Virus record (IMG/VR): IMGVR_UViG_3300016457_001310
Coordinates: 1-24,210 of that record
Reading direction: 5' to 3' (one strand)
DNA: 24,210 nt
In this document: positions 1-24,210 of the stretch, one piece after another
Numbering within the stretch: position 1 is the stretch's first letter
How the letters are laid out: every line of letters begins with the position of its first letter
Notes under the pieces: model-generated
Told to the model about the DNA's origin: nothing
The model's input: the letters and a program-made list of their open reading frames with translations, nothing else
Databases searched by the model: none
Program-made: the position numbers and the translations under genes

Positions 1-166
1 ATGCTTTCCCCTCATACACTTCCATCGGAACAGCCTTATCTATAGCAGCAAGCATTGCGAAGGTAACGTCTTCAGTGGGGTACTCTAGGTGCTCTCTAGT
101 GACGCTCCTGAGTGGGTGGTCTATCGGAACCTTAAGCCTGTGGTAATCGAGCACTAGGTCGGGCAC
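1..166 (-). CDS. Partial ORF running off the window; N-terminus resembles the 463-aa fibre-like protein (possible paralog)
   Basis: Not in the ORF track. Manual translation from GTG at 166, with GAGGTG RBS upstream: MPDLVLDYHRLKVPIDHPLRSVTREHLEYPTEDVTFAMLAAIDKAVPMEVYEGKA..., open to the window edge. Shares V-x-R-x-x-LE-x-P...A-x-L-x-A-x-x-KA with the ORF at 1468-2859. Confidence 0.7.
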   Translation of the reverse strand, partial: MPDLVLDYHRLKVPIDHPLRSVTREHLEYPTEDVTFAMLAAIDKAVPMEVYEGKA

Positions 167-190
167 TGCTCAGCACCTCTGTGTAGTGGT

Positions 191-559
191 TTAGACGCTG
201 CCCATTATCTCCTCTATGAATCCGTAGGGGAAGCTTCTGAGTGTGCCCTGTGTCTGGGTTATCGTAACCCTGTACTTCATCGAGGCTAGCAGGGTCTTTG
301 TATGGAACCTGATGACTGGGTTGCCCAGCGGGCCAGAGAAGTCTGTGCAGATGAACTTCTGGTAGTTCTGACCATCAACAGCGATGTACTCGCACACCGT
401 CACAGCATCACCCTCAGCAAGCTGGGAGAGATCTATGTATCCCTCCACCAGGTAGTCATCGTCGTTGGGCCCGAGCTCGACAACCGTTGTCTCGGTGTTG
501 AGATCCGATGGGGATACGGTTCCGCTGTACCTGTTCTTGGTCTGGATAACTATAGGCAT
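191..559 (-). CDS. 122-aa beta-rich putative structural protein, paralog B of 5085-5453
   Basis: Gap-free alignment to the ORF at 5085-5453 with about 60/122 identities counted by hand. GGTGA RBS. Beta-strand-like alternating pattern. Confidence 0.85.
   Translation of the reverse strand: MPIVIQTKNRYSGTVSPSDLNTETTVVELGPNDDDYLVEGYIDLSQLAEGDAVTVCEYIAVDGQNYQKFICTDFSGPLGNPVIRFHTKTLLASMKYRVTITQTQGTLRSFPYGFIEEIMGSV
224..272 (+). repeat. 49-bp perfect direct repeat, copy 1
   Basis: GTAGGGGAAGCTTCTGAGTGTGCCCTGTGTCTGGGTTATCGTAACCCTG is identical to 5118-5166. It encodes RVTITQTQGTLRSFPY on the minus strand. Confidence 0.95.
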
Positions 560-661
560 CTAGGGATCACCGTGCTGGCTGGGGTCGTCGAGCAGTATCT
601 CAAGCCCGCAGATCACGATAATAAGAAAAATGATTGCGTATACGAGGAGCAGCGGATTCAT
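560..661 (-). CDS. 33-aa single-pass membrane micro-protein
   Basis: Not in the ORF track. MNPLLLVYAIIFLIIVICGLEILLDDPSQHGDP*. GGTGG RBS upstream. Stop codon abuts the ATG of the next gene at 559 and the ORF fills the gap. Confidence 0.65.
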   Translation of the reverse strand: MNPLLLVYAIIFLIIVICGLEILLDDPSQHGDP

Positions 662-675
662 ATATATATCCACCG

Positions 676-876
676 CTAGCGCTGGGGTGGCTCCGACCTC
701 TCGTCGGATGGACGCTTCCTGAAGTAGAAGAAGACCACTGTCTGCGCCAACACGATGAGCGCGCCTATAACCTGGTCGGGTAGCCTTATCAGCCCAGCTC
801 CGTGAGCTATGAAGCTACCGATGATCGAGCCCCATATCATCACGGCGAACACGTTCCTGAAGCTCGTCCTCACCAC
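676..876 (-). CDS. Small two-TM membrane protein, holin-like topology
   Basis: Two hydrophobic segments (VFAVMIWGSIIGSFIAHGAGLI; VIGALIVLAQTVVFFYF) followed by a charged tail RKRPSDERSE. Start overlaps the stop codon of the upstream hydrolase gene. Confidence 0.7.
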   Translation of the reverse strand: MVRTSFRNVFAVMIWGSIIGSFIAHGAGLIRLPDQVIGALIVLAQTVVFFYFRKRPSDERSEPPQR

Positions 877-1418
877 GGTTTCACCACCCTCGTTACATAC
901 CTAACCCAGCCCAGTCCATATATATAGAAGTGCCTGTCCCAAGTTGGTATTGCTACTTCCTGGGTCTGAGGCTCGAAGAGGATCGGTATTATCCTAGACT
1001 GCCAGTAGTCCATGCACTCCGCTGGATCCTCAGAGATGCAGTACAGAGCCACGTTATAGGCGTGGTACCCCAGGAACTCGCCCCTCTCATCAACTATCTT
1101 CCCACCAGTTTCAAACATGCAGTTGAAGCCCAGCAGAGACGCCACGACCTTTGCGAGGGCACTGAAATCATCGCAATCAATCAATCCTCTGTAGGTAAAG
1201 CCGTACTCCTCCTTTATCCTCCTAAACACCCTCAGGAACTCGACGAACGCGCTGGGGGTGAAGAAGTTGAACCAGTTGTCGACACCTATGGCAACACCAT
1301 CGTCGTAGAAAGCAACGTTCTGCCACACACCCCTACCGTAGTATTGCTCTATCAGTTGTTTCACCACGCTATCGTGGAGATAGTACTGGAACTGATAGGA
1401 TCCCATACGGAGAGACAT
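870..1418 (-). CDS. Papain/transglutaminase-like cysteine hydrolase (DCDDF...HAYN...EPQ type)
   Basis: Ordered motifs DCDDFS, GYHAYNV and LFEPQT give a Cys-His-Glu triad like the papain-like C-terminal domain of MOA-type agglutinins and related phage proteins. Confidence 0.75.
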   Translation of the reverse strand: MSLRMGSYQFQYYLHDSVVKQLIEQYYGRGVWQNVAFYDDGVAIGVDNWFNFFTPSAFVEFLRVFRRIKEEYGFTYRGLIDCDDFSALAKVVASLLGFNCMFETGGKIVDERGEFLGYHAYNVALYCISEDPAECMDYWQSRIIPILFEPQTQEVAIPTWDRHFYIYGLGWVRYVTRVVKPW

Positions 1419-1467
1419 GATCCCGCCATAAAAGTGTATAGATTGCGAGGCTATAACACTAACGCCA

Positions 1468-2859
1468 TTACCACCCCAACTTCAGCACCTTACGAAGTTT
1501 ATCGATGTGCTTATCTCTTTCCTCAGTAAGCACAGACACTCTCTCCAGCCTCTTAATCCACATGCTTATAGTTTCACGCAACACGTTGTCTGACACATTC
1601 TTCAATTGTGATCTCTGTGGCTCAATCTTATGATCTATAAGGAATCCATAATAGAAATCCGCTACCTGAAATGCCTCAAGTTCAGGTACACCCAACACAT
1701 GATACGCATAATTATCCTTGCCAGCTATCCAATAGGAGAACCTCTTCCTAAATAGACGGTATTGTTCAACAGCTTCCCTATAATCTCTCGGTGGTCTAAT
1801 AGCCATTAGACCCCTTGCTTTAGCATACTCAACCTGTCTAAGTACTGCTCCCTGGCGATACGGATTATCCCTAGTAATAACTATCAGCATGTTAGTCTCT
1901 CCCTCCCTGTAGTCAAAGGCTCCCCACGATACTGATGCAATATCTATCTGATGCTTTGGTATGCGACCAAGTAGATACTCTATCTCCTCATCGGTGAAGC
2001 CCTTAGATCGAAGCATTCTGTACCTCTTAGCCTCTACAGCCACATGCGGAGGAACGCTGTGCAGTGTTGGGTCAACCTCTCTCAGATCGCTAACTAGGAG
2101 CGGTCTAAATGGCTCGTTCACACCGTCACCAGCAACCTCAGCCTCTATCACAGCTACTGCGTTGGGTAGTTGCGAGGCAACGTCTCTGATCATACCGAAG
2201 TCTATTGCGTAGCTATCGCCCGAATAGTAGTAGTTACCGAAACGACCAGAGGAGATGCTAGTATCTGTTGCGGATATGGAGCTCCAGGCACATGGATCTA
2301 TGGTGTCGACATCACGAACCTGGCCTGGAGATGATCTACATGACTTCAATGCAGATCCAGATACCTGTAGAGACGCGTGGATAATTCCAGACAAGTCAAC
2401 TGCTTCACTAGCTAACTCGGTTTCTGTGCCATTCACAACCTTATACAGCTTGTGATCCGCTGTAGCTAGCGAAGCATCAAAGTAGTTGTAGTACAGTGTG
2501 TTTACACCGTACCACCTATTGACATTGCATATAAAGTTCGTTGATAGCTTAAATAGCTGAACAACCTTCTTATCCGTTAGAACTGTTTCGTATAATGTAC
2601 CTAGACCAGATCCTCGCTTAGTCCAGATCATCCTTGCATAGGCTTTTCCTAGGGCTCTGAGATACGCTAGTTGCGAAGTAGATGGAACCTCTAGATCAAC
2701 CCTACCCACACCACCATCCTTTATCTTCGCGCTGTCTACCGAGTTGTCACATATCGTTAGCCTCCCATAGGCATCGACACAGATGTACACCTTATCTGCT
2801 ATCATCTTCGCTAGGATCTCCCTGTTCCAGAACCCCACCCGATACTCACCCCGATCCAT
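1468..2859 (-). CDS. 463-aa putative fibre/receptor-binding protein
   Basis: N-terminal DNSVDSAKIKDGGV resembles the 'svtxaKIxDgaV' trimeric fibre repeat. Beta-rich S/G/Y-rich middle region. Located in the fibre cluster. Lower GC than its neighbours. Function is inferred. Confidence 0.6.
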   Translation of the reverse strand: MDRGEYRVGFWNREILAKMIADKVYICVDAYGRLTICDNSVDSAKIKDGGVGRVDLEVPSTSQLAYLRALGKAYARMIWTKRGSGLGTLYETVLTDKKVVQLFKLSTNFICNVNRWYGVNTLYYNYFDASLATADHKLYKVVNGTETELASEAVDLSGIIHASLQVSGSALKSCRSSPGQVRDVDTIDPCAWSSISATDTSISSGRFGNYYYSGDSYAIDFGMIRDVASQLPNAVAVIEAEVAGDGVNEPFRPLLVSDLREVDPTLHSVPPHVAVEAKRYRMLRSKGFTDEEIEYLLGRIPKHQIDIASVSWGAFDYREGETNMLIVITRDNPYRQGAVLRQVEYAKARGLMAIRPPRDYREAVEQYRLFRKRFSYWIAGKDNYAYHVLGVPELEAFQVADFYYGFLIDHKIEPQRSQLKNVSDNVLRETISMWIKRLERVSVLTEERDKHIDKLRKVLKLGW

Positions 2860-2875: not shown

Positions 2876-4624
2876 TTATATTCGCTTCCTCAGCTCCTCG
2901 TAGGTTGCCCTTATGTATATGAGCGCTAGGTGGAACTGGAGGAAGTGCTCGGGCATTATCAGGTCGCCCGTCATCACAAGCATCGGGTTGCTGACGATGT
3001 CGTAGGCCTCCGAGAGGAGGCTCTCAACCTCTGGTATGCTCTCTCCCGTAGCATCCCTGTACTTGTGGTAGGTATCCCTAACGAACCTGTACAGATGTGC
3101 GCACGCCTCCATCATGTAGTTGACATGCATAGCCCTAACCTCGTCACCGCTCGAAACTGGGCTCAGCTTGGAGAGCACGCTCTCTAGGTCGCTTAGGGAG
3201 CTGGGGTAGGGCTCCGAGGTTATGGAGCTCCACAGCTCCTTGGTACCCTCCTTAACCCTGTGGATCAGGTTCAGCGGATCGTTGAAGTGGCTAGCCCTGA
3301 TAACCTCACCGAGGAGGGGCTTCTCAAGCCTATAGCCGTACACCTCCACGATCCACTTAAGGATCTCGTCTATAGCCCTACCAGCCTCGCGAAGCACCTT
3401 CAGAGGCTCCTTCCTGGTTAGGTACTCTGGAACCACATAGTCCCTCAGGATGGTCACTACCAGCCGCACAATCGATACGCTGTCGAGAGCCGTAGAAGCG
3501 TCTAGAAGGCTCTTCAGAGCGCTACGAGCAACCCTATCAAGAGCCTTAACAGCGTCCGCTACCGTGGAAGCAACAAGCTTGGCTACCCTATCCAGCGACA
3601 GAACCACATCGCTTACCGCTCTCCTAGGCTCCTTCGAGGCTAGGTACTCAGGTACAACAACGTCGAGAACGCTCCTAAGAGTAGACCTAGATACGTAGTC
3701 GCTAGCCACAGTCGCGTCATAAACCCTGAGAGGAATGCCACGACCAACCCAGTCGGTTGCCAACACAGTATCGGGTAACCTAATGGAGGGTTCCTTCGTA
3801 GCCCTATCCAGAGCCCTAGCAACATCGCTCAGGACCTTGCCCCTAACCGTCGATAGCACGTACTCGGGTACAACAGCGTCGTACACGTTCTTAACCAGCG
3901 CCCTAAAGACGCTGTCCCTAGGTATCAACGACTCGCGCCACGCCTTGGTGCTGTGCCTAACCAGGCTATCTATGCCCCTACACGCATCGAGAACCACCAC
4001 CATAGAGGTCTTCGAGAGCGCATCCGTAGCCCTACCGATGTCCCTAACCAGCTTCGCACCCTCCTTCGATAGCCTATCAAGCAACACCCCCGCATCCACC
4101 AGCGTGCGGACGAAGAAGGCTGAAACCCTAGCGAGATCTGTTAGCTTCAGAGAATCCGCCACCACCTTAGCGCTCAGCCTGCTCAGAGCATCCACAGCCC
4201 TGCCACTATCCGCTAGGGATCTCCTGAAGTGAACAGCCCTCGACACGGAGTCTACAACACTCGTCGCCTCCCTACCCACCTTCAGGGGCGCCTTGACGAG
4301 CATATCGGCTACCGCACCAGAATCCACAAACGCGCGCACGAAGTGTGCAGACACGGAGAATCCGTCTCTGCTGGTCACCGACTCGCGTACCGAGCCAGCA
4401 ACCAGCTTCGACAACGCATCGAGAATCTTAACGCCATCGAAGAGCACCTTGGATCTGTATGCTATTAAAGCATACTCGGGGATTGCATAGTCGTAGACAG
4501 CTACTGACCCCACCTTCGCAACAACGTCGCTCGCTAGAACAGTATCCGATACCTCCACGCAATAAGTAACCCCTACTAACGTGAATAGAGGTCTCTGAGC
4601 TGGTAACGCGCTGGTGAAGCTCAT
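2876..4624 (-). CDS. 582-aa repetitive structural (fibre shaft-like) protein
   Basis: About 20 degenerate D-x5-D units rich in V/A/S/R, with four (I/V)PEY variants. The C-terminal domain has three G(D/E)-x-(I/V)-x3-H repeats (GEVIRASHFN, GDEVRAMHVN, GDLIMPEHF). GGTGA RBS. Confidence 0.75.
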   Translation of the reverse strand: MSFTSALPAQRPLFTLVGVTYCVEVSDTVLASDVVAKVGSVAVYDYAIPEYALIAYRSKVLFDGVKILDALSKLVAGSVRESVTSRDGFSVSAHFVRAFVDSGAVADMLVKAPLKVGREATSVVDSVSRAVHFRRSLADSGRAVDALSRLSAKVVADSLKLTDLARVSAFFVRTLVDAGVLLDRLSKEGAKLVRDIGRATDALSKTSMVVVLDACRGIDSLVRHSTKAWRESLIPRDSVFRALVKNVYDAVVPEYVLSTVRGKVLSDVARALDRATKEPSIRLPDTVLATDWVGRGIPLRVYDATVASDYVSRSTLRSVLDVVVPEYLASKEPRRAVSDVVLSLDRVAKLVASTVADAVKALDRVARSALKSLLDASTALDSVSIVRLVVTILRDYVVPEYLTRKEPLKVLREAGRAIDEILKWIVEVYGYRLEKPLLGEVIRASHFNDPLNLIHRVKEGTKELWSSITSEPYPSSLSDLESVLSKLSPVSSGDEVRAMHVNYMMEACAHLYRFVRDTYHKYRDATGESIPEVESLLSEAYDIVSNPMLVMTGDLIMPEHFLQFHLALIYIRATYEELRKRI

Positions 4625-4690: not shown

Positions 4691-5083
4691 CTACCTCCTT
4701 CCCAGCCTCTTCCTGAGCTCGGAGAGCGGCATACCGTCAGGGCACTTGACCGCACCGTAGAACTTCTCCTTCCATGTATAGGGGATCCACCTATAGCCTC
4801 CACACCGCTTCCAGTCGTGTAGAAGCGTGTAGAAGATCACCGTTATCAGGACGGCTATGCCCCACATACCGAAGAGCACAGCTATGAGAAAAAGGAAATC
4901 AGCGTATACCCTACCCCTAAGAGGGTAGTGCCTCCCATACGGGCTCCTAGACATGACGTGGTCGGCGAGAGCCCTCTTCACCCTCCGCTTGAACTCCCTC
5001 GGGCAGAGGATAGACGTTAGCCTACCGAAGGTGTAGAGCATGTACTGCTCAAGAGTCATCCCCTTGCCCAGCTTCCAACCCAT
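4691..5083 (-). CDS. Basic membrane protein of about 130 aa
   Basis: Track ORF 4691-5098. The ATG at 5083 with GAGGAG RBS, just after the previous stop, is the likelier start. Long hydrophobic segment FLFLIAVLFGMWGIAVLITVIFYTLL. Confidence 0.7.
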   Translation of the reverse strand: MGWKLGKGMTLEQYMLYTFGRLTSILCPREFKRRVKRALADHVMSRSPYGRHYPLRGRVYADFLFLIAVLFGMWGIAVLITVIFYTLLHDWKRCGGYRWIPYTWKEKFYGAVKCPDGMPLSELRKRLGRR

Positions 5084-5084
5084 G

Positions 5085-5453
5085 CTAGATCTCCTCAAGC
5101 ACTTGAACGACGAACCAGTAGGGGAAGCTTCTGAGTGTGCCCTGTGTCTGGGTTATCGTAACCCTGGGCTGGGCATCCTTTGGAAGCGTCATCGAGAGCA
5201 GGTGCACAACGGGGTTATCGAGAGGCCCGTCAACCGCTATGGTATCCAGCTTCCTCCTGTTAGACCCGTCGACAGCTATGTAGATAACCAGCTTCACCGA
5301 GTCACCGCTCTGGAGCTGCGATAGATCTACGTAGCCCTCCAGGATTATCGCGTTCTCGTATGTCCCGAGGTTGATCAGATCGGTCTCCACGTTCAGATCG
5401 CTGGGCGTTACGGTGCCTCGGTACTCCTCCTTACGCTTTATCCTGACTACCAT
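5085..5453 (-). CDS. 122-aa beta-rich putative structural protein, paralog A of 191-559
   Basis: Same length as and collinear with 191-559. Shared blocks GTV-PSDLN-ET, EGY-DLSQL, YIAVDG and RVTITQTQGTLRSFPY. GAGGT RBS. Confidence 0.85.
   Translation of the reverse strand: MVVRIKRKEEYRGTVTPSDLNVETDLINLGTYENAIILEGYVDLSQLQSGDSVKLVIYIAVDGSNRRKLDTIAVDGPLDNPVVHLLSMTLPKDAQPRVTITQTQGTLRSFPYWFVVQVLEEI
5118..5166 (+). repeat. 49-bp perfect direct repeat, copy 2
   Basis: Identical to 224-272. Confidence 0.95.
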
Positions 5454-5465
5454 TGCTAGGCTACC

Positions 5466-6017
5466 TCACCTGCTCATCTGTATGTAGTACCTAATCGTGA
5501 TGGCGTCCCCAGCGTCGAAGTTCACTGGGACTGGGTTGAACGTCTTCCTAGCCAGCAACACACCACCAGAGGACGCGTTGAAGACCCCAGCCTCGGAGAT
5601 CTCCATACTCCCGCTAAGCCCGTCCTCGCTTGAGAACGTAGCTTCCAGGAGCGCGGTATCGCCCTCAACATCGGTCGTTGTCTGGCTAACCGAAGCCTGC
5701 TTCCTAGCGACCTCGGCTTCGAGAGCCGTATCAGTAACGGATTCGGATGTAGTGCCAGTACCGATAGCAACATACGTGAACGGCGTGCCACCGAGGTTGA
5801 ACACCAGCTTAATGATCTCCGCGAGCCCAGCGTTCGTCACAACGTTCTTCCTGAAGTAGAAGAGTACCTGGGTCTCTGGCAGAACACCCTTGGGGATGAC
5901 AGGCACTGGGTTACCGCGAGCAAGCGTAACCAGGTACTTCGGTCTACCCCTCCTGTCCCAGACTATGACCTCTACCCAGCCAGCGATAACCACCCTAGAG
6001 CTGTCTCCCCTCCACAT
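5466..6017 (-). CDS. Tail-collar / tail-fibre-anchor-like protein
   Basis: Motif series N-VVTNAG...YVAIGTG...TDTALEAEVAR...ISEAGVFN...LLARKTF...ITIRY matches the pattern of phage tail-collar fibre (DUF3751-like) N-terminal domains. Confidence 0.75.
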   Translation of the reverse strand: MWRGDSSRVVIAGWVEVIVWDRRGRPKYLVTLARGNPVPVIPKGVLPETQVLFYFRKNVVTNAGLAEIIKLVFNLGGTPFTYVAIGTGTTSESVTDTALEAEVARKQASVSQTTTDVEGDTALLEATFSSEDGLSGSMEISEAGVFNASSGGVLLARKTFNPVPVNFDAGDAITIRYYIQMSR

Positions 6018-10909: not shown

Positions 10910-13900
10910 CTACCTACCGTATATTGTCTGTATGCGTTTCTTCTCAAGCTCCGCACCGTCAACTATCAGCGCTATCTCATCATCGGTGAGACCGTACTTC
11001 TTGAGAGCCTGTAGCTTCTGTATCAGGGTGTTCCTATCTATGATACCGTTGGCGTAGGCGTAGACCAGCCTGTTGCGGTACCACGCTATCTGCCTCCACA
11101 CGATGCGGTTCCTAGCCAGCTTCTTGTAGTACTCTATCTGCTTCTGGTACCTCGCTACGTCTATACCCCTAGCTCTGAGCACATCGCTGAGGATCTGCTC
11201 CCACTCTGGTATGTACCTGGCATCGGCTACGAGCTGGCGGATGGTCGGTACCAGCCAGCTAAGCACCCTGTACTCCTTGCGTAGCTGGAGAGCGAGGCTG
11301 AACACCTCAAGCTCCTTCCCGACCCAGCCGCCCTTCCTCATCCACTCAGCTACCTTGCTAGCGACCTCGCGAGACACCGTGAAGTACTCGTAGAGCCTCC
11401 TGTACTCAGCAACGAGCTGGTTCACCTCGCCCGCTATAGACCTAGCCTCTATGTACCTCAGCCACAGATCGGCAAAGTCCTTGGGAACCCTCCTAAGCTG
11501 TAGCACCCTATCGATTATGGTTCTGGGCACCTCGATGTACTCGACCATGGACGCTATGGTTCCTAGGCTAGGTACGTACTCCCTAGCGGACTCTATGAGT
11601 AGCTCGTAGTATACGCGCTTCTCGATCAGCTCTATCTCCTTCGGGGTGAAGCCGTAGCTCTTAGCGTCGTCGAGGAGCTTCTTCCACTCATCCTCAGAGA
11701 TAACACCGTACCTGAGAGCCCTAGCAGCAACGCTTAGAACCGCCTTGTAGTCGCTCTTAACTGGCCTCACCTGTATGTATTTCAGCCATATATCTATCCA
11801 CTCCTGTGGAACCCTCCTAGCCTCAAGCACCTTCCTAATCAGATCCTCCTTGAGCACGAGATACTCAGCCAGCGTTGCGAGCATCGTCGGTGTCGGTAGG
11901 TAGGCTCTCCTAAGCTCCATAGCCTCGGCAATCTCCTCCTCCAGATCCACGCGCTCCTTGATGAACTCGATCTCCTTGGATGTGAAGCCGTACTGACCGA
12001 GCTTATCTATGAACTCCTCCAGCTCCTTCTTGGTGATAACACCGTACCTGAGAGCCCTTATCTTGACCGAGAGCAACGACTTGACATCGCTCTTAATAGG
12101 CTTAGCCTCTATGTACTTCTTCCAGTAGTCTATCCACTCATCGGCTACCCTATGGTACTTCAGAGCGCTCAGAACCTTGTCCTCGGGCAAGACAATGTAC
12201 TCAGCAAGTGTTGCGAGCTGCGACGGTGTTGGAATCCTAACCTTAGCCTCCTCCAGCTTCTCCTCCAAGTCTATCCTATCCCTAAGTATCTTGATCTCCT
12301 CGTCGGTGAAGCCGTACTCCTTAGCCTTATCGATTATCTCGTCAAGCCTCTTCTTCTCTATGACGTTACGTAGGTAGGCACGGATAGCCACAGATATGTA
12401 CGCCTTGTAGTCGCTCTTCAGCGGCTTTACCTCTATATACTTCTCCCATATCTCCCTCCACTTCTCGGATACGCCATACCTCTTCAGAGCCTCCTCAACG
12501 AGATCCTTGGGTAGCGCTAGGTACTCGGCTAGAACCGCCAGCGTCGATGGAGACGGAATCCTCTCCCTAGCCGCCTGCCTAAGCTCGTCTATCCTCCTCT
12601 CGAAGGCGGCTATAACGTTGTACATCACCCACTCATGAGGCGCTATACCGAACGCCTGGAACACGTCCCTGTTAGCGTCGTAGAACGCAAGCAGCTTCTT
12701 AGCCTCGTCAGCACCCTCGATAACCAGCTCACCGCCCCTCACGGTGAACTTCATAGAGTACTTACTGAGTATATCCACGACCTCGTCGATGCCCATACCC
12801 AGAGCAAGCGCGTTGTATATCCTGGTCCTGAGAAGCGTCAGCTCGTCCTGTATCGGCTTCCTAGCAACGTAGAGCCTCCAGTACTGAAGCTCGTCGCTCG
12901 GCATGTTGAAGTGCTCCAAAGCCTTCAGGCTCGTGCTGATGGCTTCGGGCACGATCTCTAGGAGGGTCGCGTAGGTTGTTAGACCAGGCGTGTACCAGAC
13001 CACGTTGGCGTCTATATACTTCTTGGCGAGATCCTCGGAGAAGCCCAGCTTCTTGAGTTGCTCGATAGCCTCCGAGACGGCTATCCTCCTCGATCTGAGC
13101 AGGTTGATGATCGCCTTAGCCTTGACCTCCCTCTCGAACCTATAGACCATGAACTCCACGGAGAGCTCTATCGCCTCCCTAACGATGGGGTGCTCATGCA
13201 TCTTCTCCACTAGCTTGGATACCCAGCCCTTGGCCTCGTCAATCGTTACATAGCCGTAGCGCAGAGCCCATAACACCGACCACAGCAGGTACCTAGCGTA
13301 GAACCTCGTGCGCTCCCTAGCCTCAAGCTCTATGATCGCCTCGGCATACTTGCTCCAGGCCTCCCAGTAGCCAGTATCTAGCACTAGGGACAGCTCCTTG
13401 CCAGTGAGGCTCTTTACCGTCTGCTTGAAGAACTTCTCGTTTATCGCGCTGACAATATCGGCAATGATCTCCCTAGCCTTGGCTGGATCCACCACGTAGT
13501 AGGCTACGCTGCGTATGATGTACCTATACGCCTCTCTGTAGATATCGAGAGCCCTATCCATAGTTGCCCTGATCTCCAGGAGCTTGGACTCGGCTGGTAG
13601 GAACGCTATCGGGTACTCAACGGTTGCCGATACCCAGTCCCTCTTCTCTAGGTCGAAGTAGCCTACCTCGAACTTAACCGTGAAGAAACCCGAGAGTAGC
13701 TGGTGTAGGTGGTCTAGGCTCCATATACCCTCCTTGTATAGGTTGATGAAGCCAGTTCTGAGCAGTGTGCGCTCCTCGGTTAGGGCGTTTATTGTCTCGG
13801 CTATCGCTACCCACGGTATCCAGTACGGGTGTATACCCGTAGCCTGCAACACCCTACAGAACTGCTTGAGGTCGAAGACTATCTCACCCTTCTTCAGGTA

Positions 13901-16900
13901 CTGGAGGTAGAGATCCGCCATCGGTCTAGCCGACGCAGTGGTGCCCTCGGGTATGAGACTCTTGGTTATCTCGTGGATAGCCTTCTTCAGACCGATGCCG
14001 TATGCAGACCAGTAGTCGAAGAGGCCCCACCTTGTCATCCATCTCAGGTCTATCTTGGTGGGTATGTCAGCCATAAGCTCGATCATTATGGCGTTATCGG
14101 TTGGCCACCCAGGTTGCCACGGAAACCTGGCATAGTCATGCCACTTCATGTAGGTGCTGATCATCTTTTGCAACAAATCATATCTGAAGTTCAGCTCCTT
14201 GGGAGCCACAGCCTTCACAACCGTTGGGTCTAGACCGAAGGTCTTCATTATGTTCTCGTCGACTGGTGCCTCAGGGTTCCACAGCTCACCAGCGATACCC
14301 CTCCAGAAGAACTCTGCTAGCTTCTCTGGCGGTGGGTACCTGTAGTGCAGTAAGTAGAACATGAACGCCACGTCTGGCGTGAAGCCGTGCATAGCCATAA
14401 CTGCCGCAAAGTGCCTTGGATCCTGTATGATGTCCCTCACCATCATCCTAGCTAGCTCGCTCGGGCTCGGTATTGCCCACACCATCGATACTGGGAAGAG
14501 CCTCTCCTTCCTGGTGTATGACGTAAACCTATCCCATATCCTCAGAGCCCCCAGCTCCCTATCGTAGAGCTCGGATACATTGCCGAGTTGCTTAGCGACC
14601 TCCTCAGCGAGCTTGGTATTGAGACCATAGATCCTCTCTATAAAGCCCTTGTAGATACCACCCATCCTGAGCTGGTCTACAAACATCTTGTAGTTGTCCA
14701 TGAGTATCGGTGTCGGTATAGACCTCCTAACCAAGTTGAGAGTGTGCTCCATTGGTGGAAGCTCGACGGTTACGTACTCGGTCAGGTTGTACCTAGTGAT
14801 TGCCCTGGTTGGCTCGGCCCACCATATCATGTGGCCTATGATCATGTACCTCGCTACGTCTGGCATGAACTTCTCGAACTGCGAAACAGCCTTCTCAAGA
14901 ACGTCCTTCAGCTTCAGTCTTATCCTAGCACCGACACCGAGTGGCTCACCACTTATCTCGGTATCTGGTAACGCAGATACCAAGGGCTTCAGTATGAGGC
15001 CAACACCGTAGATGGCGGCCGATATCAGCACGCCAACGTTGAGCAGGTTGTATATGAACCTCACGGGGTTCTTCTTGGCCTCCTCTATCACCTCGCCGAG
15101 CTTCTCGACCATTATCGGTGTGAGCGGTAGTAGTATAGCCTCGATTATGGGGAACCATGGAGACGCAAGTATCTCGTAGAGCGCTGGGCTAGACCTAGCC
15201 ACTATCAGGTTGGTTATAGCCTTCATAGCGTTGCCGATAGCTGTAGCGATATCCTTACCGACCTCTCCAATAACCGAGATAACAGTCATTACAGCTCTGC
15301 CTACCCACGAAGCAAGCGTCTTAAATGCCGAGACAAACCAGTTACCGAGTCCCGTCAGGATGTTCCATAGCCACTGCGCACCCTCGACGATCTTCTGTCC
15401 GATCCACTGTAGAGAGTTCCAAACTGTCGTTACTAGCCTCTCTGGTAGCTGCATAACCGCGTTCACGAAGCCAGTGAGGTAGACACCCACCAGCTTCAGG
15501 TTCTCAGACACCTTGGTAAGAGCCTCGCCTAGCTTCGCGAAGCCCTCGCTTACCAGCGTTCCGAGCTTGGTCAGGTAGTCCCACAGTGATATGCCTACCT
15601 CTCTAAGCGTCCCGAAGACGATCTGCGGAATCCTCTGGATCTCCTCAACAACACCGCTTACCAGCGACGGGAACTGCTCGGTGAAGAACCTAGCCACCGT
15701 CTCCAGTCCGCTCCTAACCATGTCTAGGAACTGGGTGAACGCCTCGGTAATGGGCTTCACAACGTTCTCGCTGATCCACGTGCCTAGACCAGCTACCGCC
15801 TCCTTTACCTGGTCTACGAGGCTCGGAAGCGTCTCGGCTATGAAGCTCCTAACGGTCTCGAACCCCTCGGAGATGAAGCCGATCAGGTTCTCAAGAGCGC
15901 CCCTAAGCGGGGCGAGCACGTTGCTCTGGATGAAGCTCCATATACCCGCTAGGGCGCTCTGGATCTGGCTAACCATGCTAGCGATAGCCGACGATACGCT
16001 TCCGAGACCCTGCTGAACCGCTGATAGGATGCTCTGCACAGCCGATGTTAGAGGCGCGATAACGTTCTGCTGGATCCACGAAGCGATCCCCGCAACAGCA
16101 TCGCGGAGCTGAGCAACGAAACTATTGATGTAGCTCGGCAACTCCTCGGTGAAGAACCTAGATACGGTCTGTAGACCGCTGTTGATGAAGTCTATGAAGC
16201 TCTGGAAAGCCGCTGTTAGGGGTGCTACAACGTTCTCCTGTACCCAGGTAGCTATTCCAGATAGCGTCTGCTGTATAGACGCAATAGCCTGGCTTACGAA
16301 TGCTGGTAGCTCCTCGGTGAAGAACCTGGAGACCGTCTCCAGACCGCTACTAATTAGCTGTATCAACTGGCTAAACGCGTTGCTCAGCGGTGCAACAACG
16401 TTCTCCTGGATCCAGGTGGCTAGCTCACCAACAGCTTGCTGAACCATCGCTGGTATCTGCGACACAAAGCTCGTCACGGTGTCGAGACCGCGTGTAATCG
16501 TCTCTATCAGGTTATTTACAGCGGTTAGCAGGGGTGTGACCACATAGTCGTTTATCAGCGTGCTGATGTCGCTTATCCATTTCTGGAGCTCCGCAAACAT
16601 CTGCGGAACGGTCTCGGTGAAGAACGTCGTTAGCGTCGATATGCCCTGGCTGATCCAGCTCATCAGGTTGTTAATAGCGCTGAACAGCGGGTCGATTATG
16701 TCCTCCTGTATCCAGCTCCATACACCGCTTATCTGGCGACTTAGCCAATCCAGAGCGTTCTCAACCGTGCCTGGTATCTGCTGTAGGAAGCTCCACACCT
16801 GCTCAACGAGGTTCTTGATCGTGTCGAGGAACGGCTTAGCTACCGTGTCCCAGAGCCTGCGACCTATCTCCTCGACCGTCTGAGCAAACCAGGAGGCGAG

Positions 16901-17158
16901 CTCGCTCATACGGTCGTAGAGCCACTGCTGTAGCTGTCCAATCGGGTCGGTGATGCCGTGCTCCGAGGTAACGAGAGCCTCTAGATCGAGCTCCTCTAGA
17001 TCCCTGATAACCGTTACGGTGAAGACCTCCTCGATACCCTTGCTCCACCTAAGCTCCCATAGACCAGCCGCGCTGAGAGTAGCCGCTAGGTACTTAGCGT
17101 CCTCGGCGGTGAAGAGCTCCAGCCTCTGATGGCTGGTCACAGCTACACCCGAGAACAA
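10910..17158 (-). CDS. Giant (about 2080 aa) virion terminal-structure/fibre protein with tape-measure-like N-terminus and C-terminal helical repeats
   Basis: Uninterrupted 6.2-kb ORF. Residues ~70-660 carry amphipathic W/F-periodic repeats (WIQENVVAPL...GLETVSRFFTEELP). The C-terminal third has ~6 repeats starting P(S/T)PxxLAxLAEY, several with YGFTxxEI. The GTG at 17140 (RBS GGGTG) is an alternative start. Confidence 0.85.
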   Translation of the reverse strand: MFSGVAVTSHQRLELFTAEDAKYLAATLSAAGLWELRWSKGIEEVFTVTVIRDLEELDLEALVTSEHGITDPIGQLQQWLYDRMSELASWFAQTVEEIGRRLWDTVAKPFLDTIKNLVEQVWSFLQQIPGTVENALDWLSRQISGVWSWIQEDIIDPLFSAINNLMSWISQGISTLTTFFTETVPQMFAELQKWISDISTLINDYVVTPLLTAVNNLIETITRGLDTVTSFVSQIPAMVQQAVGELATWIQENVVAPLSNAFSQLIQLISSGLETVSRFFTEELPAFVSQAIASIQQTLSGIATWVQENVVAPLTAAFQSFIDFINSGLQTVSRFFTEELPSYINSFVAQLRDAVAGIASWIQQNVIAPLTSAVQSILSAVQQGLGSVSSAIASMVSQIQSALAGIWSFIQSNVLAPLRGALENLIGFISEGFETVRSFIAETLPSLVDQVKEAVAGLGTWISENVVKPITEAFTQFLDMVRSGLETVARFFTEQFPSLVSGVVEEIQRIPQIVFGTLREVGISLWDYLTKLGTLVSEGFAKLGEALTKVSENLKLVGVYLTGFVNAVMQLPERLVTTVWNSLQWIGQKIVEGAQWLWNILTGLGNWFVSAFKTLASWVGRAVMTVISVIGEVGKDIATAIGNAMKAITNLIVARSSPALYEILASPWFPIIEAILLPLTPIMVEKLGEVIEEAKKNPVRFIYNLLNVGVLISAAIYGVGLILKPLVSALPDTEISGEPLGVGARIRLKLKDVLEKAVSQFEKFMPDVARYMIIGHMIWWAEPTRAITRYNLTEYVTVELPPMEHTLNLVRRSIPTPILMDNYKMFVDQLRMGGIYKGFIERIYGLNTKLAEEVAKQLGNVSELYDRELGALRIWDRFTSYTRKERLFPVSMVWAIPSPSELARMMVRDIIQDPRHFAAVMAMHGFTPDVAFMFYLLHYRYPPPEKLAEFFWRGIAGELWNPEAPVDENIMKTFGLDPTVVKAVAPKELNFRYDLLQKMISTYMKWHDYARFPWQPGWPTDNAIMIELMADIPTKIDLRWMTRWGLFDYWSAYGIGLKKAIHEITKSLIPEGTTASARPMADLYLQYLKKGEIVFDLKQFCRVLQATGIHPYWIPWVAIAETINALTEERTLLRTGFINLYKEGIWSLDHLHQLLSGFFTVKFEVGYFDLEKRDWVSATVEYPIAFLPAESKLLEIRATMDRALDIYREAYRYIIRSVAYYVVDPAKAREIIADIVSAINEKFFKQTVKSLTGKELSLVLDTGYWEAWSKYAEAIIELEARERTRFYARYLLWSVLWALRYGYVTIDEAKGWVSKLVEKMHEHPIVREAIELSVEFMVYRFEREVKAKAIINLLRSRRIAVSEAIEQLKKLGFSEDLAKKYIDANVVWYTPGLTTYATLLEIVPEAISTSLKALEHFNMPSDELQYWRLYVARKPIQDELTLLRTRIYNALALGMGIDEVVDILSKYSMKFTVRGGELVIEGADEAKKLLAFYDANRDVFQAFGIAPHEWVMYNVIAAFERRIDELRQAARERIPSPSTLAVLAEYLALPKDLVEEALKRYGVSEKWREIWEKYIEVKPLKSDYKAYISVAIRAYLRNVIEKKRLDEIIDKAKEYGFTDEEIKILRDRIDLEEKLEEAKVRIPTPSQLATLAEYIVLPEDKVLSALKYHRVADEWIDYWKKYIEAKPIKSDVKSLLSVKIRALRYGVITKKELEEFIDKLGQYGFTSKEIEFIKERVDLEEEIAEAMELRRAYLPTPTMLATLAEYLVLKEDLIRKVLEARRVPQEWIDIWLKYIQVRPVKSDYKAVLSVAARALRYGVISEDEWKKLLDDAKSYGFTPKEIELIEKRVYYELLIESAREYVPSLGTIASMVEYIEVPRTIIDRVLQLRRVPKDFADLWLRYIEARSIAGEVNQLVAEYRRLYEYFTVSREVASKVAEWMRKGGWVGKELEVFSLALQLRKEYRVLSWLVPTIRQLVADARYIPEWEQILSDVLRARGIDVARYQKQIEYYKKLARNRIVWRQIAWYRNRLVYAYANGIIDRNTLIQKLQALKKYGLTDDEIALIVDGAELEKKRIQTIYGR

Positions 17159-18869: not shown

Positions 18870-19244
18870 TTAGTACGGTGGTACGGCTCCTATGAGTGCC
18901 TCTATGATCCTGTCGAGCACTGCTGGATCGCACTTGTAGGCCGTTACGAAGTAGCTCTTGATGCCGCTAACCTCCTTCTGGAGTGTTAGACCGCTGTGGC
19001 TGAACATTGTCTTAGCTACTATCTGCGCGAAGGCTAGATAGGGAGCCCATAGACCAGTTGGCACACCCTCTTCGCTCAGGATGTTCCTAGCTACCTCCAC
19101 AGCGTTGTATATGGCGGCAGTAGCGCTCTCGAACCTAGCCTCCATAATGGGCTTGACAGCCGTCAGCCTGTTGGTCACGTTGGTACCGTCGTACTTAGCC
19201 TCGTACTTGGCTCTCATATCACCTAATCTCTTAACGATGGGCAT
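18870..19244 (-). CDS. Major capsid protein 2, SIRV2-like (Adnaviria) fold
   Basis: AKYEAKY...NILSEEGVPTGLWAPYLAFAQIVAK...SGIKSYFVTAYKCDPAVLDRIIEALIG matches the rudivirus MCP pattern as I recall it (AKWQAKF...VLTQYGITGPNRAIYQGFGLKVAR...NGLKGYYISAFNANPQVLDAVVNIITG). Strong GGGGGTGA RBS. Confidence 0.88.
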   Translation of the reverse strand: MPIVKRLGDMRAKYEAKYDGTNVTNRLTAVKPIMEARFESATAAIYNAVEVARNILSEEGVPTGLWAPYLAFAQIVAKTMFSHSGLTLQKEVSGIKSYFVTAYKCDPAVLDRIIEALIGAVPPY

Positions 19245-19270: not shown

Positions 19271-19627
19271 TTATCCAACTATCAGGTTCGCGATCTTGTC
19301 TAGTATAGCGGGGTCGGCACCCTTAGCAACGAACCACTGCTTGAGACCGCTGGCAATCGCTTGCAGGTCAGCACCCTCGTGGCTCAGAGCCTTGCTTGCT
19401 AGCTTCATCGCGAACGCGTAGTAGACACCGTGGAACCCTGCTGGAACACCCTCGCTCTCAAGTATGTTCCTAACGCGCTCCCTGACAGCCGCCATCACGC
19501 CGCTGCCCTCGATGTACCTAGTCACAGCGATGTCCTTTACCGCACCGTATCTAGTACCTGTCTGATCTGGTGGTGTCTTTGCCTTGAACTTCTCTACTCG
19601 GTCTGCAAGGGTCTTGACTATGGGCAT
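19271..19627 (-). CDS. Major capsid protein 1, SIRV2-like (Adnaviria) fold
   Basis: Paralog of MCP2: shared MPIVK-L-D start, RNIL--EGVP-G, Y-AFA, SH-G--LQ, SG-K--FV and DPA-LD-I. Confidence 0.88.
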   Translation of the reverse strand: MPIVKTLADRVEKFKAKTPPDQTGTRYGAVKDIAVTRYIEGSGVMAAVRERVRNILESEGVPAGFHGVYYAFAMKLASKALSHEGADLQAIASGLKQWFVAKGADPAILDKIANLIVG

Positions 19628-23802: not shown

Positions 23803-24210
23803 CTAGCTCGCCTCCCGCACCTCGCGTATTATGTCGGTTATCGGTATGTAGAGCCTGAGGACGGGGTACGTAGGCTTCTTGCTGGTTTCGTCGCTTGGTG
23901 TGGGGAGCTTCTTCGGCACCATGTGAAGCACGAGACCGTAGACCGATCTCCGCGGCTCTTCGAGCTCTACCCAGTCCAGCCTCGGCACAGTTATGAACAG
24001 CGCGTGGTTCTCAACGAACCTCTCCAGCTCCCTTAGGCTGGAGAACCTGAGGACAGCGTCTGCAACCCTATCCATCCGCGCGCTGTAGCTCTCCACCTTC
24101 TTGGTCAGCTCGTTGACGAACTCGCTTACGTAGCTCTGGAGCCTCTCGTAGCACTCCTTGCATAGGTAGAGATGGTAGTAGTCGGGTGGGTAGGCACCTG
24201 GTTTGTACGC
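23803..24210 (-). CDS. Partial hypothetical protein with a CxxC motif; 5' end outside the window
   Basis: The frame of track ORF 23803-24096 stays open to the window end: ...AYKPGAYPPDYYHLYLCKECYERLQSYVSEFVNELTKKVES... Confidence 0.75.
   Translation of the reverse strand, partial: AYKPGAYPPDYYHLYLCKECYERLQSYVSEFVNELTKKVESYSARMDRVADAVLRFSSLRELERFVENHALFITVPRLDWVELEEPRRSVYGLVLHMVPKKLPTPSDETSKKPTYPVLRLYIPITDIIREVREAS

What the first reader, a model, noticed from the sequence alone, without database searches (positions are those of the whole stretch)
1..2859. Second fibre-like paralog begins at the window edge: duplicated adapter-plus-adhesin modules
Seen: the unannotated ORF starting at 166 contains SVTREHLEYPTEDVTFAMLAAIDKA, which aligns with GVGRVDLEVPSTS-QLAYLRALGKA near the N-terminus of the 463-aa protein. 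Each of the two lies downstream of a copy of the 122-aa gene. Inference: the virus carries at least two alternative receptor-binding proteins with a shared N-terminal docking segment and different payloads.
Basis: partly seen in the sequence, partly recalled or inferred. Interest (0 to 1): 0.6.

Follow-up and report, generated by a model that had tools for sequence, protein, structure and literature searches.

The report
Second lectin-fibre paralog at contig edge

Summary
On the minus strand a GTG at 166, with a GAGGTG Shine-Dalgarno box 7 nt upstream, opens a frame that runs off the contig after 55 codons. Pairwise BLASTP against the 463-aa protein finds nothing (E 22). Against a profile of that protein's family it scores 99.2% probability, E 8.5e-20. 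A 1746-bp contig overlaps the window's last 321 nt at 99% identity and carries the whole gene.

The family has at least 204 clusters and no Pfam or PDB sequence match. Its layout is a variable N-terminus, a junction motif, a ConA/CBM66-like lectin sandwich and a strongly conserved C-terminal domain.

The two paralogs are homologous throughout and least alike at the N-terminus. The two 122-aa genes are ancient paralogs with different partners: copy B follows a gp80-like gene, and copy A sits next to family members. Payload swapping on a constant N-terminus does occur in a close relative. A receptor-binding role is inferred, not shown.

The parts
2..166 (-). First 55 codons of a roughly 421-aa paralog of the 463-aa protein (GTG start 166-164); the gene is cut by the contig end
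32..106 (-). Family junction motif in the edge ORF (SVTREHLEYPTEDVTFAMLAAIDKA, residues 21-45)
174..179 (-). GAGGTG Shine-Dalgarno-like box 7 nt upstream of the GTG start
   Evidence: read directly from the sequence
191..559 (-). 122-aa jelly-roll protein, copy A (the clade that neighbours family members)
676..876 (-). 66-aa hydrophobic ORF, shared only with L013 and sister contigs
870..1418 (-). 182-aa ORF, shared only with L013 and sister contigs; possible papain-like (MOA C-terminal-like) domain, a lead only
1468..2859 (-). 463-aa family member. Residues 1-53 are a lineage-specific N-terminus, 50-73 the junction motif, about 56-230 the ConA/CBM66-like lectin sandwich, and 270-463 the conserved alpha/beta plus helical C-terminal domain ending in GW
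2641..2712 (-). Junction motif in the 463-aa protein (GVGRVDLEVPSTSQLAYLRALGKA); the recombination breakpoint seen against L013 lies just upstream of it
2876..4624 (-). 582-aa repeat protein with an 'MSFTS' N-terminus, a frequent neighbour of the 122-aa genes
4691..5098 (-). 135-aa ORF with a hydrophobic segment, lineage-specific, overlapping the end of copy B by 14 nt
5085..5453 (-). 122-aa jelly-roll protein, copy B (the clade always directly downstream of the gp80-like gene)
5466..6017 (-). 183-aa gp80-like / tail-collar-fibre-like protein, the constant upstream partner of copy B

Best explanation
Context. The window is one whole metagenome contig of an uncultured filamentous archaeal virus. 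It has two SIRV2-type coat protein paralogs, a giant rudivirus-like minor structural protein, Hjc, glycosyltransferases and a methyltransferase.

What the edge ORF is. It is the 5' end of a gene for a roughly 421-aa protein that is an old paralog (37% identity) of the 463-aa protein. Both belong to a large, unnamed family found on contigs with the same coat-protein and structural genes from hot-spring and other metagenomes, some of them binned with Thermoprotei, Thermofilales and Guaymas MAGs.

Architecture (shown). A short, variable N-terminal segment comes first, followed in some members by phage tail-fibre-type 'IADGAVTTAK' repeats. Next comes the junction motif VTRxKLEYPTxDV. After that sits a ConA/CBM66-like lectin beta-sandwich that differs sharply even between near-identical strains. 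The protein ends in a highly conserved alpha/beta plus helical C-terminal domain.

Function (inferred). Both proteins are glycan-binding adhesins displayed at the virion ends. The lectin domain recognises host surface glycans, and the conserved parts hold the protein in the terminal structure. The two paralogs have different N-termini, so they probably sit at different docking sites and are shown together rather than as alternatives.

The 122-aa protein. This very conserved jelly-roll protein is a linked structural partner. Whether it acts as an adapter is a guess.

The contig end. The contig probably stops inside the gene because co-occurring strains diverge there. The genome does not end at that point.
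For: Paralogy:
- establish it.
- L013, whose copy A is 94% identical, has a complete 421-aa family member directly after copy A.

Virus type: Sulf_coat_C on two adjacent ORFs, plus Hjc, glycosyltransferases and a methyltransferase. The coat proteins are 25-30% identical to rudiviral ones. The C-terminus of the giant protein matches the rudiviral 'minor structural protein'.

Fold:
- The AF2 model has pLDDT 85.8.
- Residues 56-230 match CBM66 (VIA Z 10.6, rmsd 3.7 over 144 residues; Foldseek E 1.5e-5).
- They also match L-type lectins and phage receptor-binding domains: TM4 gp23 (Z 9.2), the Douge baseplate, and J-1 Dit CBM2.
- In BFVD the model matches many minor tail and tail fibre proteins.

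Fibre repeats: tail-fibre PHROGs match 11 of 36 members, and the matches map to the N-terminal repeats.

Hypervariable core: the edge-type proteins of L093 and L013 are 85-95% identical over the first two 30-column alignment blocks (about 40 residues) and 71-90% over the last three blocks (about 85 residues). In between they are only 18-60% identical. DNA similarity stops at codon 35, right after the motif.

Contig break: three contigs (the window, L002, L003) all end within codons 43-58.

Module swap at the 463 locus in L013.

Gene linkage:
- The 122-aa genes lie next to lectin-type or fibre-type genes in most of 80 loci (fam463, DUF2341, gp80-like, MSFTS repeat proteins).
- In a Thermofilales MAG contig, 183, 122B, 122A and fam463 are contiguous.
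Against: - There is no direct evidence that either protein is in the virion or binds anything.
- The best-conserved part is the C-terminal domain, whose fold was not searched on its own and whose function is unknown. It could be enzymatic.
- The two window paralogs themselves lack the fibre repeats, apart from one degenerate unit.
- Sugar-binding residues were not examined.
- The complex prediction for the 421-aa protein with copy A gave no verdict.
Confidence: 0.6

Rival explanations
1. The family proteins are not adhesins. They are glycan-acting enzymes or host-surface modifiers, with the lectin sandwich serving as a carbohydrate-binding module for a catalytic C-terminal domain. Possible roles are cutting S-layer or pilus glycans at entry or egress, or superinfection exclusion.
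For: The C-terminal domain is the most conserved part and has invariant acidic, His and Trp positions. CBM66 and the GH43/GH32-attached sandwiches among the fold hits are enzyme appendages. The genome carries several glycan-related genes.
Against: There is no Pfam, PDB-sequence or Atlas match for the C-terminal domain. Homologs carry tail-fibre repeats. The genes lie in the structural gene block next to fibre-like genes. The strain-level variability sits in the lectin domain, as it does in receptor-binding proteins.
Confidence: 0.2
2. The two proteins share an N-terminal docking peptide that plugs into the 122-aa adapter, carry unrelated payloads, and each adapter-adhesin pair is a duplicated module.
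For: The motif is shared and lies near both N-termini. Copy A directly precedes the edge gene. Payload exchange on a fixed N-terminus is seen in L013.
Against: The bodies are homologous (37% identity over the full length). The N-terminal parts are the least similar. Copy B belongs to a separate clade that always follows the gp80-like gene and never neighbours a family member directly. In most loci the family gene lies upstream of copy A's type, not downstream (19 against 5).
Confidence: 0.1
3. The edge ORF is a remnant at a true genome end, a truncated pseudogene or terminal sequence, and this virus does not encode a second full-length protein.
For: Three contigs stop within 45 nt of each other. 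Filamentous archaeal viruses have linear genomes (general knowledge).
Against: L093 continues from 99%-identical sequence through a complete 421-aa gene, a 75-nt spacer and a further ORF. L013 shows the same. No terminal inverted or direct repeat was found. The start has a good SD box and the family's canonical N-terminus.
Confidence: 0.04

Closest known systems
Receptor-binding and tail-fibre proteins of tailed phages with lectin-type heads (for example mycobacteriophage TM4 gp23 C-terminal RBD, Douge baseplate and fibre proteins, Lactobacillus phage J-1 Dit CBM2)
   Same: They share a ConA-like sandwich (VIA Z 7.7-9.2). Homologs carry N-terminal tail-fibre-type repeats. Modules are exchanged between close strains. 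Several fibre-like genes lie side by side.
   Different: The host virus is a filamentous archaeal virus with no tail. The lectin domain is central rather than C-terminal, and it is followed by a conserved roughly 190-aa domain with no match found. There is no sequence-level relation outside the repeats.
CBM66 and L-type (legume, ERGIC-53/VIP36) lectin domains
   Same: The best fold matches are to these domains: 4b1m, Z 10.6, rmsd 3.7 A over 144 residues, Foldseek E 1.5e-5.
   Different: Sequence identity is 11-16%. Ligand-binding and Ca2+ sites were not compared, and no Pfam lectin model hits.
Terminal fibre / minor structural protein of Rudiviridae (SIRV2 P1070 type)
   Same: It belongs to the same kind of virion, and it is the protein thought to form the terminal fibres that contact host pili (from memory; not checked in a paper here). 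This genome has a homolog in the 2082-aa ORF.
   Different: The family studied here is unrelated to it in sequence and is absent from all cultured rudi- and lipothrixvirus records searched.
Jelly-roll subunits: Bacillus Ena fibres, TNF/C1q-like lectins (BC2L-C N-terminal domain), lambda gpJ tip domain (for the 122-aa protein)
   Same: An eight-strand jelly roll. Ena2A gives Z 11.1, rmsd 2.5 over 105 residues. The TNF-like, C1q and gpJ matches have Z about 7.5-8.
   Different: Identity is about 10%. The protein has no N-terminal connector like the one in Ena. GOLD domains and small plant-virus capsids score equally well, so only the generic fold is shared.

Membership tests
Unnamed '463-aa' family (alignments A2/A4; at least 204 clusters) | N-terminal MPDLVLDYHRLKxPIDH segment plus the junction motif VTRxKLEYPTxDV | tested here: met
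   The edge ORF matches profile columns 15-82 (probability 99.2%, E 8.5e-20). It has the same start as P0124, P0125, P0132 and others.
Unnamed '463-aa' family (alignments A2/A4; at least 204 clusters) | Full architecture (lectin core plus conserved C-terminal domain ending in GW) in the edge gene | tested here: met
   This cannot be read in the window itself. It is met in L093 (99% identical overlap; HMM columns 1-447, E 6e-152) and in L013.
Phage-type receptor-binding / fibre protein | Fibre repeats or a trimeric shaft | tested here: inconclusive
   Repeats are present in 11 of 36 homologs. The two window paralogs have none that match (P0241: 0 PHROGs). Oligomeric state was not tested.
Phage-type receptor-binding / fibre protein | A variable receptor-binding domain flanked by conserved parts | tested here: met
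   L093 against L013: 18-60% identity in the core, 71-95% at the ends.
Phage-type receptor-binding / fibre protein | Presence in the virion and determination of host range | not testable with these tools
   No cultured relative; no proteomics.
ConA-like lectin / CBM66 | Beta-sandwich fold | tested here: met
   Z 10.6 and Foldseek E 1.5e-5 on a model with pLDDT 85.8.
ConA-like lectin / CBM66 | Conserved sugar- or metal-binding residues; glycan binding | not tested
   Model coordinates cannot be inspected here; no assay is possible.
Adapter role of the 122-aa protein | Physical contact with the family protein | tested here: inconclusive
   Gene adjacency in 24 of 84 copy-A-type genes. The complex prediction gave no verdict.
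Tokiviricetes filamentous viruses (Rudiviridae/Lipothrixviridae-like) | SIRV2-type major coat protein(s) | tested here: met
   PF12193 on ORFs 18870-19244 and 19271-19627 (E 1e-12 and 9e-12); tblastn hits to rudiviral coat proteins.
Tokiviricetes filamentous viruses (Rudiviridae/Lipothrixviridae-like) | Linear genome with inverted terminal repeats | tested here: inconclusive
   No ITR or overlap at the contig ends, but the contigs are incomplete.

The most novel reading that the evidence does not exclude
A clade of uncultured filamentous viruses of hyperthermophilic archaea (Thermofilales/Thermoprotei-associated) builds its host-recognition apparatus from a cassette system. Short N-terminal anchors are joined to interchangeable carbohydrate-binding bodies (ConA-like, discoidin-like, DUF2341) through a fibre-repeat junction motif that doubles as the recombination boundary. 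These are organised around two ancient, highly conserved 122-aa jelly-roll hub proteins. This genome would then display two different lectin adhesins at once. It would be the first defined receptor-binding system for such viruses and would point to glycans, not only pili, as receptors.
Probability: 0.3. Interest if true: 0.6.

Novelty: new variant of a known kind. Interest (0 to 1): 0.45.

Why it matters
Host recognition by filamentous archaeal viruses is poorly understood, and most of their structural genes have no annotation. This work defines a large, unnamed protein family. It has a confident model, a lectin core, clear strain-level cassette exchange and fixed gene partners, so it offers concrete candidates for expression, glycan-array and cryo-EM work. 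It also explains a practical artefact: metagenome assemblies of these viruses break inside this gene, so automated annotation loses the second paralog.

Tried and rejected
- Circular join of the contig: no terminal overlap or ITR. The joined frame gives only 101 aa of unrelated sequence. The far end of the 28.3-kb sister contig carries unrelated genes and has no overlap.
- DNA and protein searches of cultured phage and archaeal virus records with the left 6.1 kb, copy A and P0241: no match.
- IMG/VR scans with single proteins found nothing. With the two-sequence alignment they found one locus.
- Pfam and PHROGs on the 463-aa, 122-aa and 55-aa sequences: nothing meaningful. Pex14_N falls below its cutoff.
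- PDB sequence profile search with the family: 0 hits.
- ESM Atlas: the feature search with the C-terminal domain gave no usable hit. The shape search with the whole model returned only lectin/DUF1080-type rows.
- Complex prediction of the 421-aa protein with copy A: no verdict (score 0.00). This counts neither for nor against binding.
- The genome search on the record behind L002 was not possible.
- The BFVD top hit A0A0N9MN81 (E 1e-18, full length) could not be named.
- Paper searches gave nothing on this family.
- No tRNA or Rfam family lies in the window.
- Plus-strand ORFs inside 1-2859 (for example 302-679 and 930-1529) are shadows of the minus-strand genes. They were not searched for homologs, and none is in the gene calls for the sister contigs.
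Full report
What the window is. The window is a whole contig (24,210 bp, one contig in the 'genome'), and nearly all of its genes lie on the minus strand. It encodes the following:
- two adjacent SIRV2-type coat protein paralogs (PF12193; 18870-19244 and 19271-19627);
- two GT4 glycosyltransferases and a SAM methyltransferase;
- an Hjc resolvase;
- a 2082-aa protein whose C-terminus matches the rudiviral 'minor structural protein'.

It is therefore an uncultured filamentous archaeal virus, distantly related to Rudiviridae and Lipothrixviridae (coat proteins 25-30% identical). It has no DNA match in cultured virus records. Related contigs come from several JGI and ENA metagenomes. A few are binned with Thermoprotei, Desulfurococcaceae, Thermofilales and Thermofilum MAGs. 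The host assignment is tentative.

The observation. On the minus strand, copy A of the 122-aa gene ends at 191. After a 24-nt spacer that contains GAGGTG (179-174), a GTG at 166 opens a frame that is still open at base 2, 55 codons later. The 463-aa ORF contains the partner string at residues 50-73 (window 2641-2712). The two strings share 10 of 24 positions. Pairwise BLASTP does not find this alignment (best E 22), so taken alone it could be chance.

It is not chance. The 463-aa protein has at least 204 relatives (90% clusters) of about 420 aa, all unannotated. In an alignment of 36 of them (A2), many start MPDLVLDYHRLKxPIDH...VTRxKLEYPTxDVxFAYLxAIxK. That is the edge ORF's sequence almost word for word. 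Three tests agree:
- hhalign of the 55 aa against this profile gives probability 99.2%, E 8.5e-20.
- The family HMM gives E 1e-08.
- A phmmer search with the 58 aa that are visible in a sister contig, run against 1.84 billion representatives, finds P0241. It is 421 aa and 100% identical over all 58 residues.

P0241 lies on a 1746-bp ENA contig (L093). Its first 321 nt match the window's last 321 nt at 99.07%. It then continues through the whole gene, a 75-nt spacer and the start of another ORF. A second close relative, L013 (copy A 94% identical), has the same order: 582, a 206-aa ORF at the 463-aa locus, 182, 66, 122A, then a complete 421-aa family member.

Why the contig stops there. Three contigs of this virus end within codons 43-58 of this gene: the window, a 28.3-kb JGI contig and a 26.0-kb ENA contig. 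There is no terminal overlap or inverted repeat. The far end of the longer contig carries unrelated genes. L093 and L013 are 89% identical in DNA up to codon 35, have no detectable DNA similarity across the core, and are 81% identical again over the last 260 nt. At the protein level the ends are 71-95% identical and the core 18-60%. I infer that co-occurring strains differ in this core and that the assembly graph breaks there.

What the proteins look like. The AF2 model of the 463-aa protein is confident (pLDDT 85.8, pTM 0.83).
- Residues about 56-230 form a ConA-like sandwich. The best matches are CBM66 (VIA Z 10.6, rmsd 3.7 A over 144 residues; Foldseek E 1.5e-5), the galactocerebrosidase lectin domain, L-type lectins, and phage receptor-binding modules (TM4 gp23 RBD Z 9.2, Douge baseplate, J-1 Dit CBM2).
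- Against viral models the matches are mostly minor tail and tail fibre proteins. One unnamed full-length hit has E 1e-18.
- Residues 270-463 are alpha/beta plus helical and are the best-conserved part of the family. No match was found for them by sequence or by Atlas features.
- Eleven of 36 family members match tail-fibre PHROGs (best E 5e-19). These matches map to 'IADGAVTTAK'-type repeats inserted between the N-terminal segment and the junction motif.
- By eye, the junction motif looks like a degenerate last unit of that repeat. This is my reading of alignment A2.

The two window paralogs do not share an anchor and differ in payload. The reverse is closer to the truth. Identity per 30-column block is 28, 40, 18, 13, 26, 51, 31, 20, 29, 44, 41, 43, 26, 73, 35 and 73%. 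The 463-aa protein has its own 53-aa N-terminus.

The two 122-aa genes are also not copies of one module. In 80 metagenome loci plus others, a tree of 99 sequences separates two clades with 99% SH-aLRT support. One clade has 15 members and includes copy B. Every member lies directly downstream of a gp80-like 183-aa gene. The other clade has 84 members and includes copy A. In it, 19 members have a family gene directly upstream and 5 have one directly downstream (this was the quick tree, because the careful search did not finish). The window's order, 122A then family gene, is the minority one. It is shared with L013, L014, L045 and L067, and with a Thermofilales MAG contig where 183, 122B, 122A and the family gene are contiguous. 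Compared with that arrangement, the window has the 135, 582, 463, 182 and 66 genes lying between 122B and 122A.

At the 463-aa locus of L013, the first 56 residues are 84% identical to the window's (E 2e-29) and the upstream DNA is about 90% identical. From the codon just before the junction motif onward, however, the sequence is unrelated. It consists of a fibre-type repeat and a 150-aa body with weak F5/8-type-C (discoidin) hits below Pfam's cutoffs. So a constant N-terminus with exchangeable carbohydrate-binding bodies does occur in this lineage. Both observed breakpoints flank the motif, one just before it and one just after. Other neighbours of the copy-A-type gene are also of lectin or fibre type:
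- DUF2341 proteins;
- gp80-like phrog_23653 proteins;
- 'MSFTS' repeat proteins such as the 582-aa ORF.

The 122-aa protein. The model is very confident (pLDDT 98) and shows an eight-strand jelly roll. The best matches are Ena fibre subunits (Z 11.1), GOLD domains, small plant-virus capsids, TNF/C1q-like lectins and the lambda gpJ tip. Only the generic fold is shared. The family is highly conserved (mean column identity 70%), while its neighbours vary. That fits a structural hub or adapter, but this is inference only. The one complex prediction gave no verdict.

Most likely mechanism. Shown: the paralogy, the domain layout, the lectin-type fold, the strain-level cassette exchange and the gene linkage. 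Inferred: both proteins are glycan-binding adhesins at the virion termini, attached through different N-terminal segments and therefore displayed together, and the 122-aa jelly rolls are conserved partners in the terminal structure. I put the whole statement at about 0.6. The paralogy part alone is about 0.97. The main rival is that the conserved C-terminal domain is an enzyme and the lectin sandwich is its CBM (0.2).

Novelty. No named family, solved structure or paper was found for either protein. The kind of protein, a modular viral adhesin with a lectin head, is well known from tailed phages. This family differs in three ways. Its host virus is a filamentous archaeal virus. The lectin domain sits centrally. 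A conserved C-terminal domain of unknown function follows it. I rate it a new variant of a known kind, of moderate interest.

The virus infects archaea.

Noticed in passing
window 218-272 and 5112-5166: A 55-nt patch, coding RVTITQTQGTLRSFPY, is 96% identical between the two 122-aa paralogs. The rest of the two genes is about 52% identical in DNA. Across other genomes the same patch is at most 80% identical between the two clades (mean 58%). This looks like a local gene conversion tract in this lineage. L012 shows 85%.
   Followed up: partly
L013:695-1312 (corresponds to window 1468-2859): In a close relative the 463-aa gene is replaced by a 206-aa ORF. It keeps only the first 56 residues and then carries a fibre repeat and a discoidin-like body (Pfam hits below cutoff).
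   Followed up: yes
window 870-1418 (-): The 182-aa ORF is present only in this lineage. Its Atlas feature hits (0.93) are to viral clusters that carry PF18022/PF18021, which I recall as the papain-like C-terminal domain of the MOA agglutinin (from memory, not checked). A Cys...His pattern is visible by eye. This is a lead only.
   Followed up: partly
window 10910-17158 (-): A 2082-aa protein. Its N-terminal third gives tape-measure-like coiled-coil hits. Its C-terminus is homologous to the rudiviral minor structural protein (phrog_7334, E 8e-58). The protein is about twice the length of the phrog_7334 profile (1078 positions).
   Followed up: partly
L054:686-2257: A gp80-like (phrog_23653) neighbour of a 122-aa gene carries an inserted Hint/LAGLIDADG intein. 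That is unusual for a putative structural gene of an archaeal filamentous virus.
   Followed up: no
window 24210 end; L009:1-4500 vs L010:1-2200: Sister contigs that are identical over the window differ beyond its right end. One has an STIV_B116-like gene and four other ORFs; the other has an SSO2105_N protein. This end of the genome is variable. The window also cuts a 203-aa gene at 23803-24210.
   Followed up: partly
window 2876-4624 (-): The 582-aa 'MSFTS' protein is built of degenerate repeats (six 45-nt repeat copies at irregular 54-324-nt spacing; VVPEY...D..SR/K units). Its relatives range from 170 to 911 aa and lie in either orientation next to the 122-aa genes.
   Followed up: partly
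window 560-673, 676-876, 4691-5098 (-): Three small ORFs with hydrophobic segments (37, 66 and 135 aa) are interleaved with the fibre-like genes. The 135-aa ORF overlaps the end of copy B by 14 nt. No homologs were seen outside this lineage.
   Followed up: no
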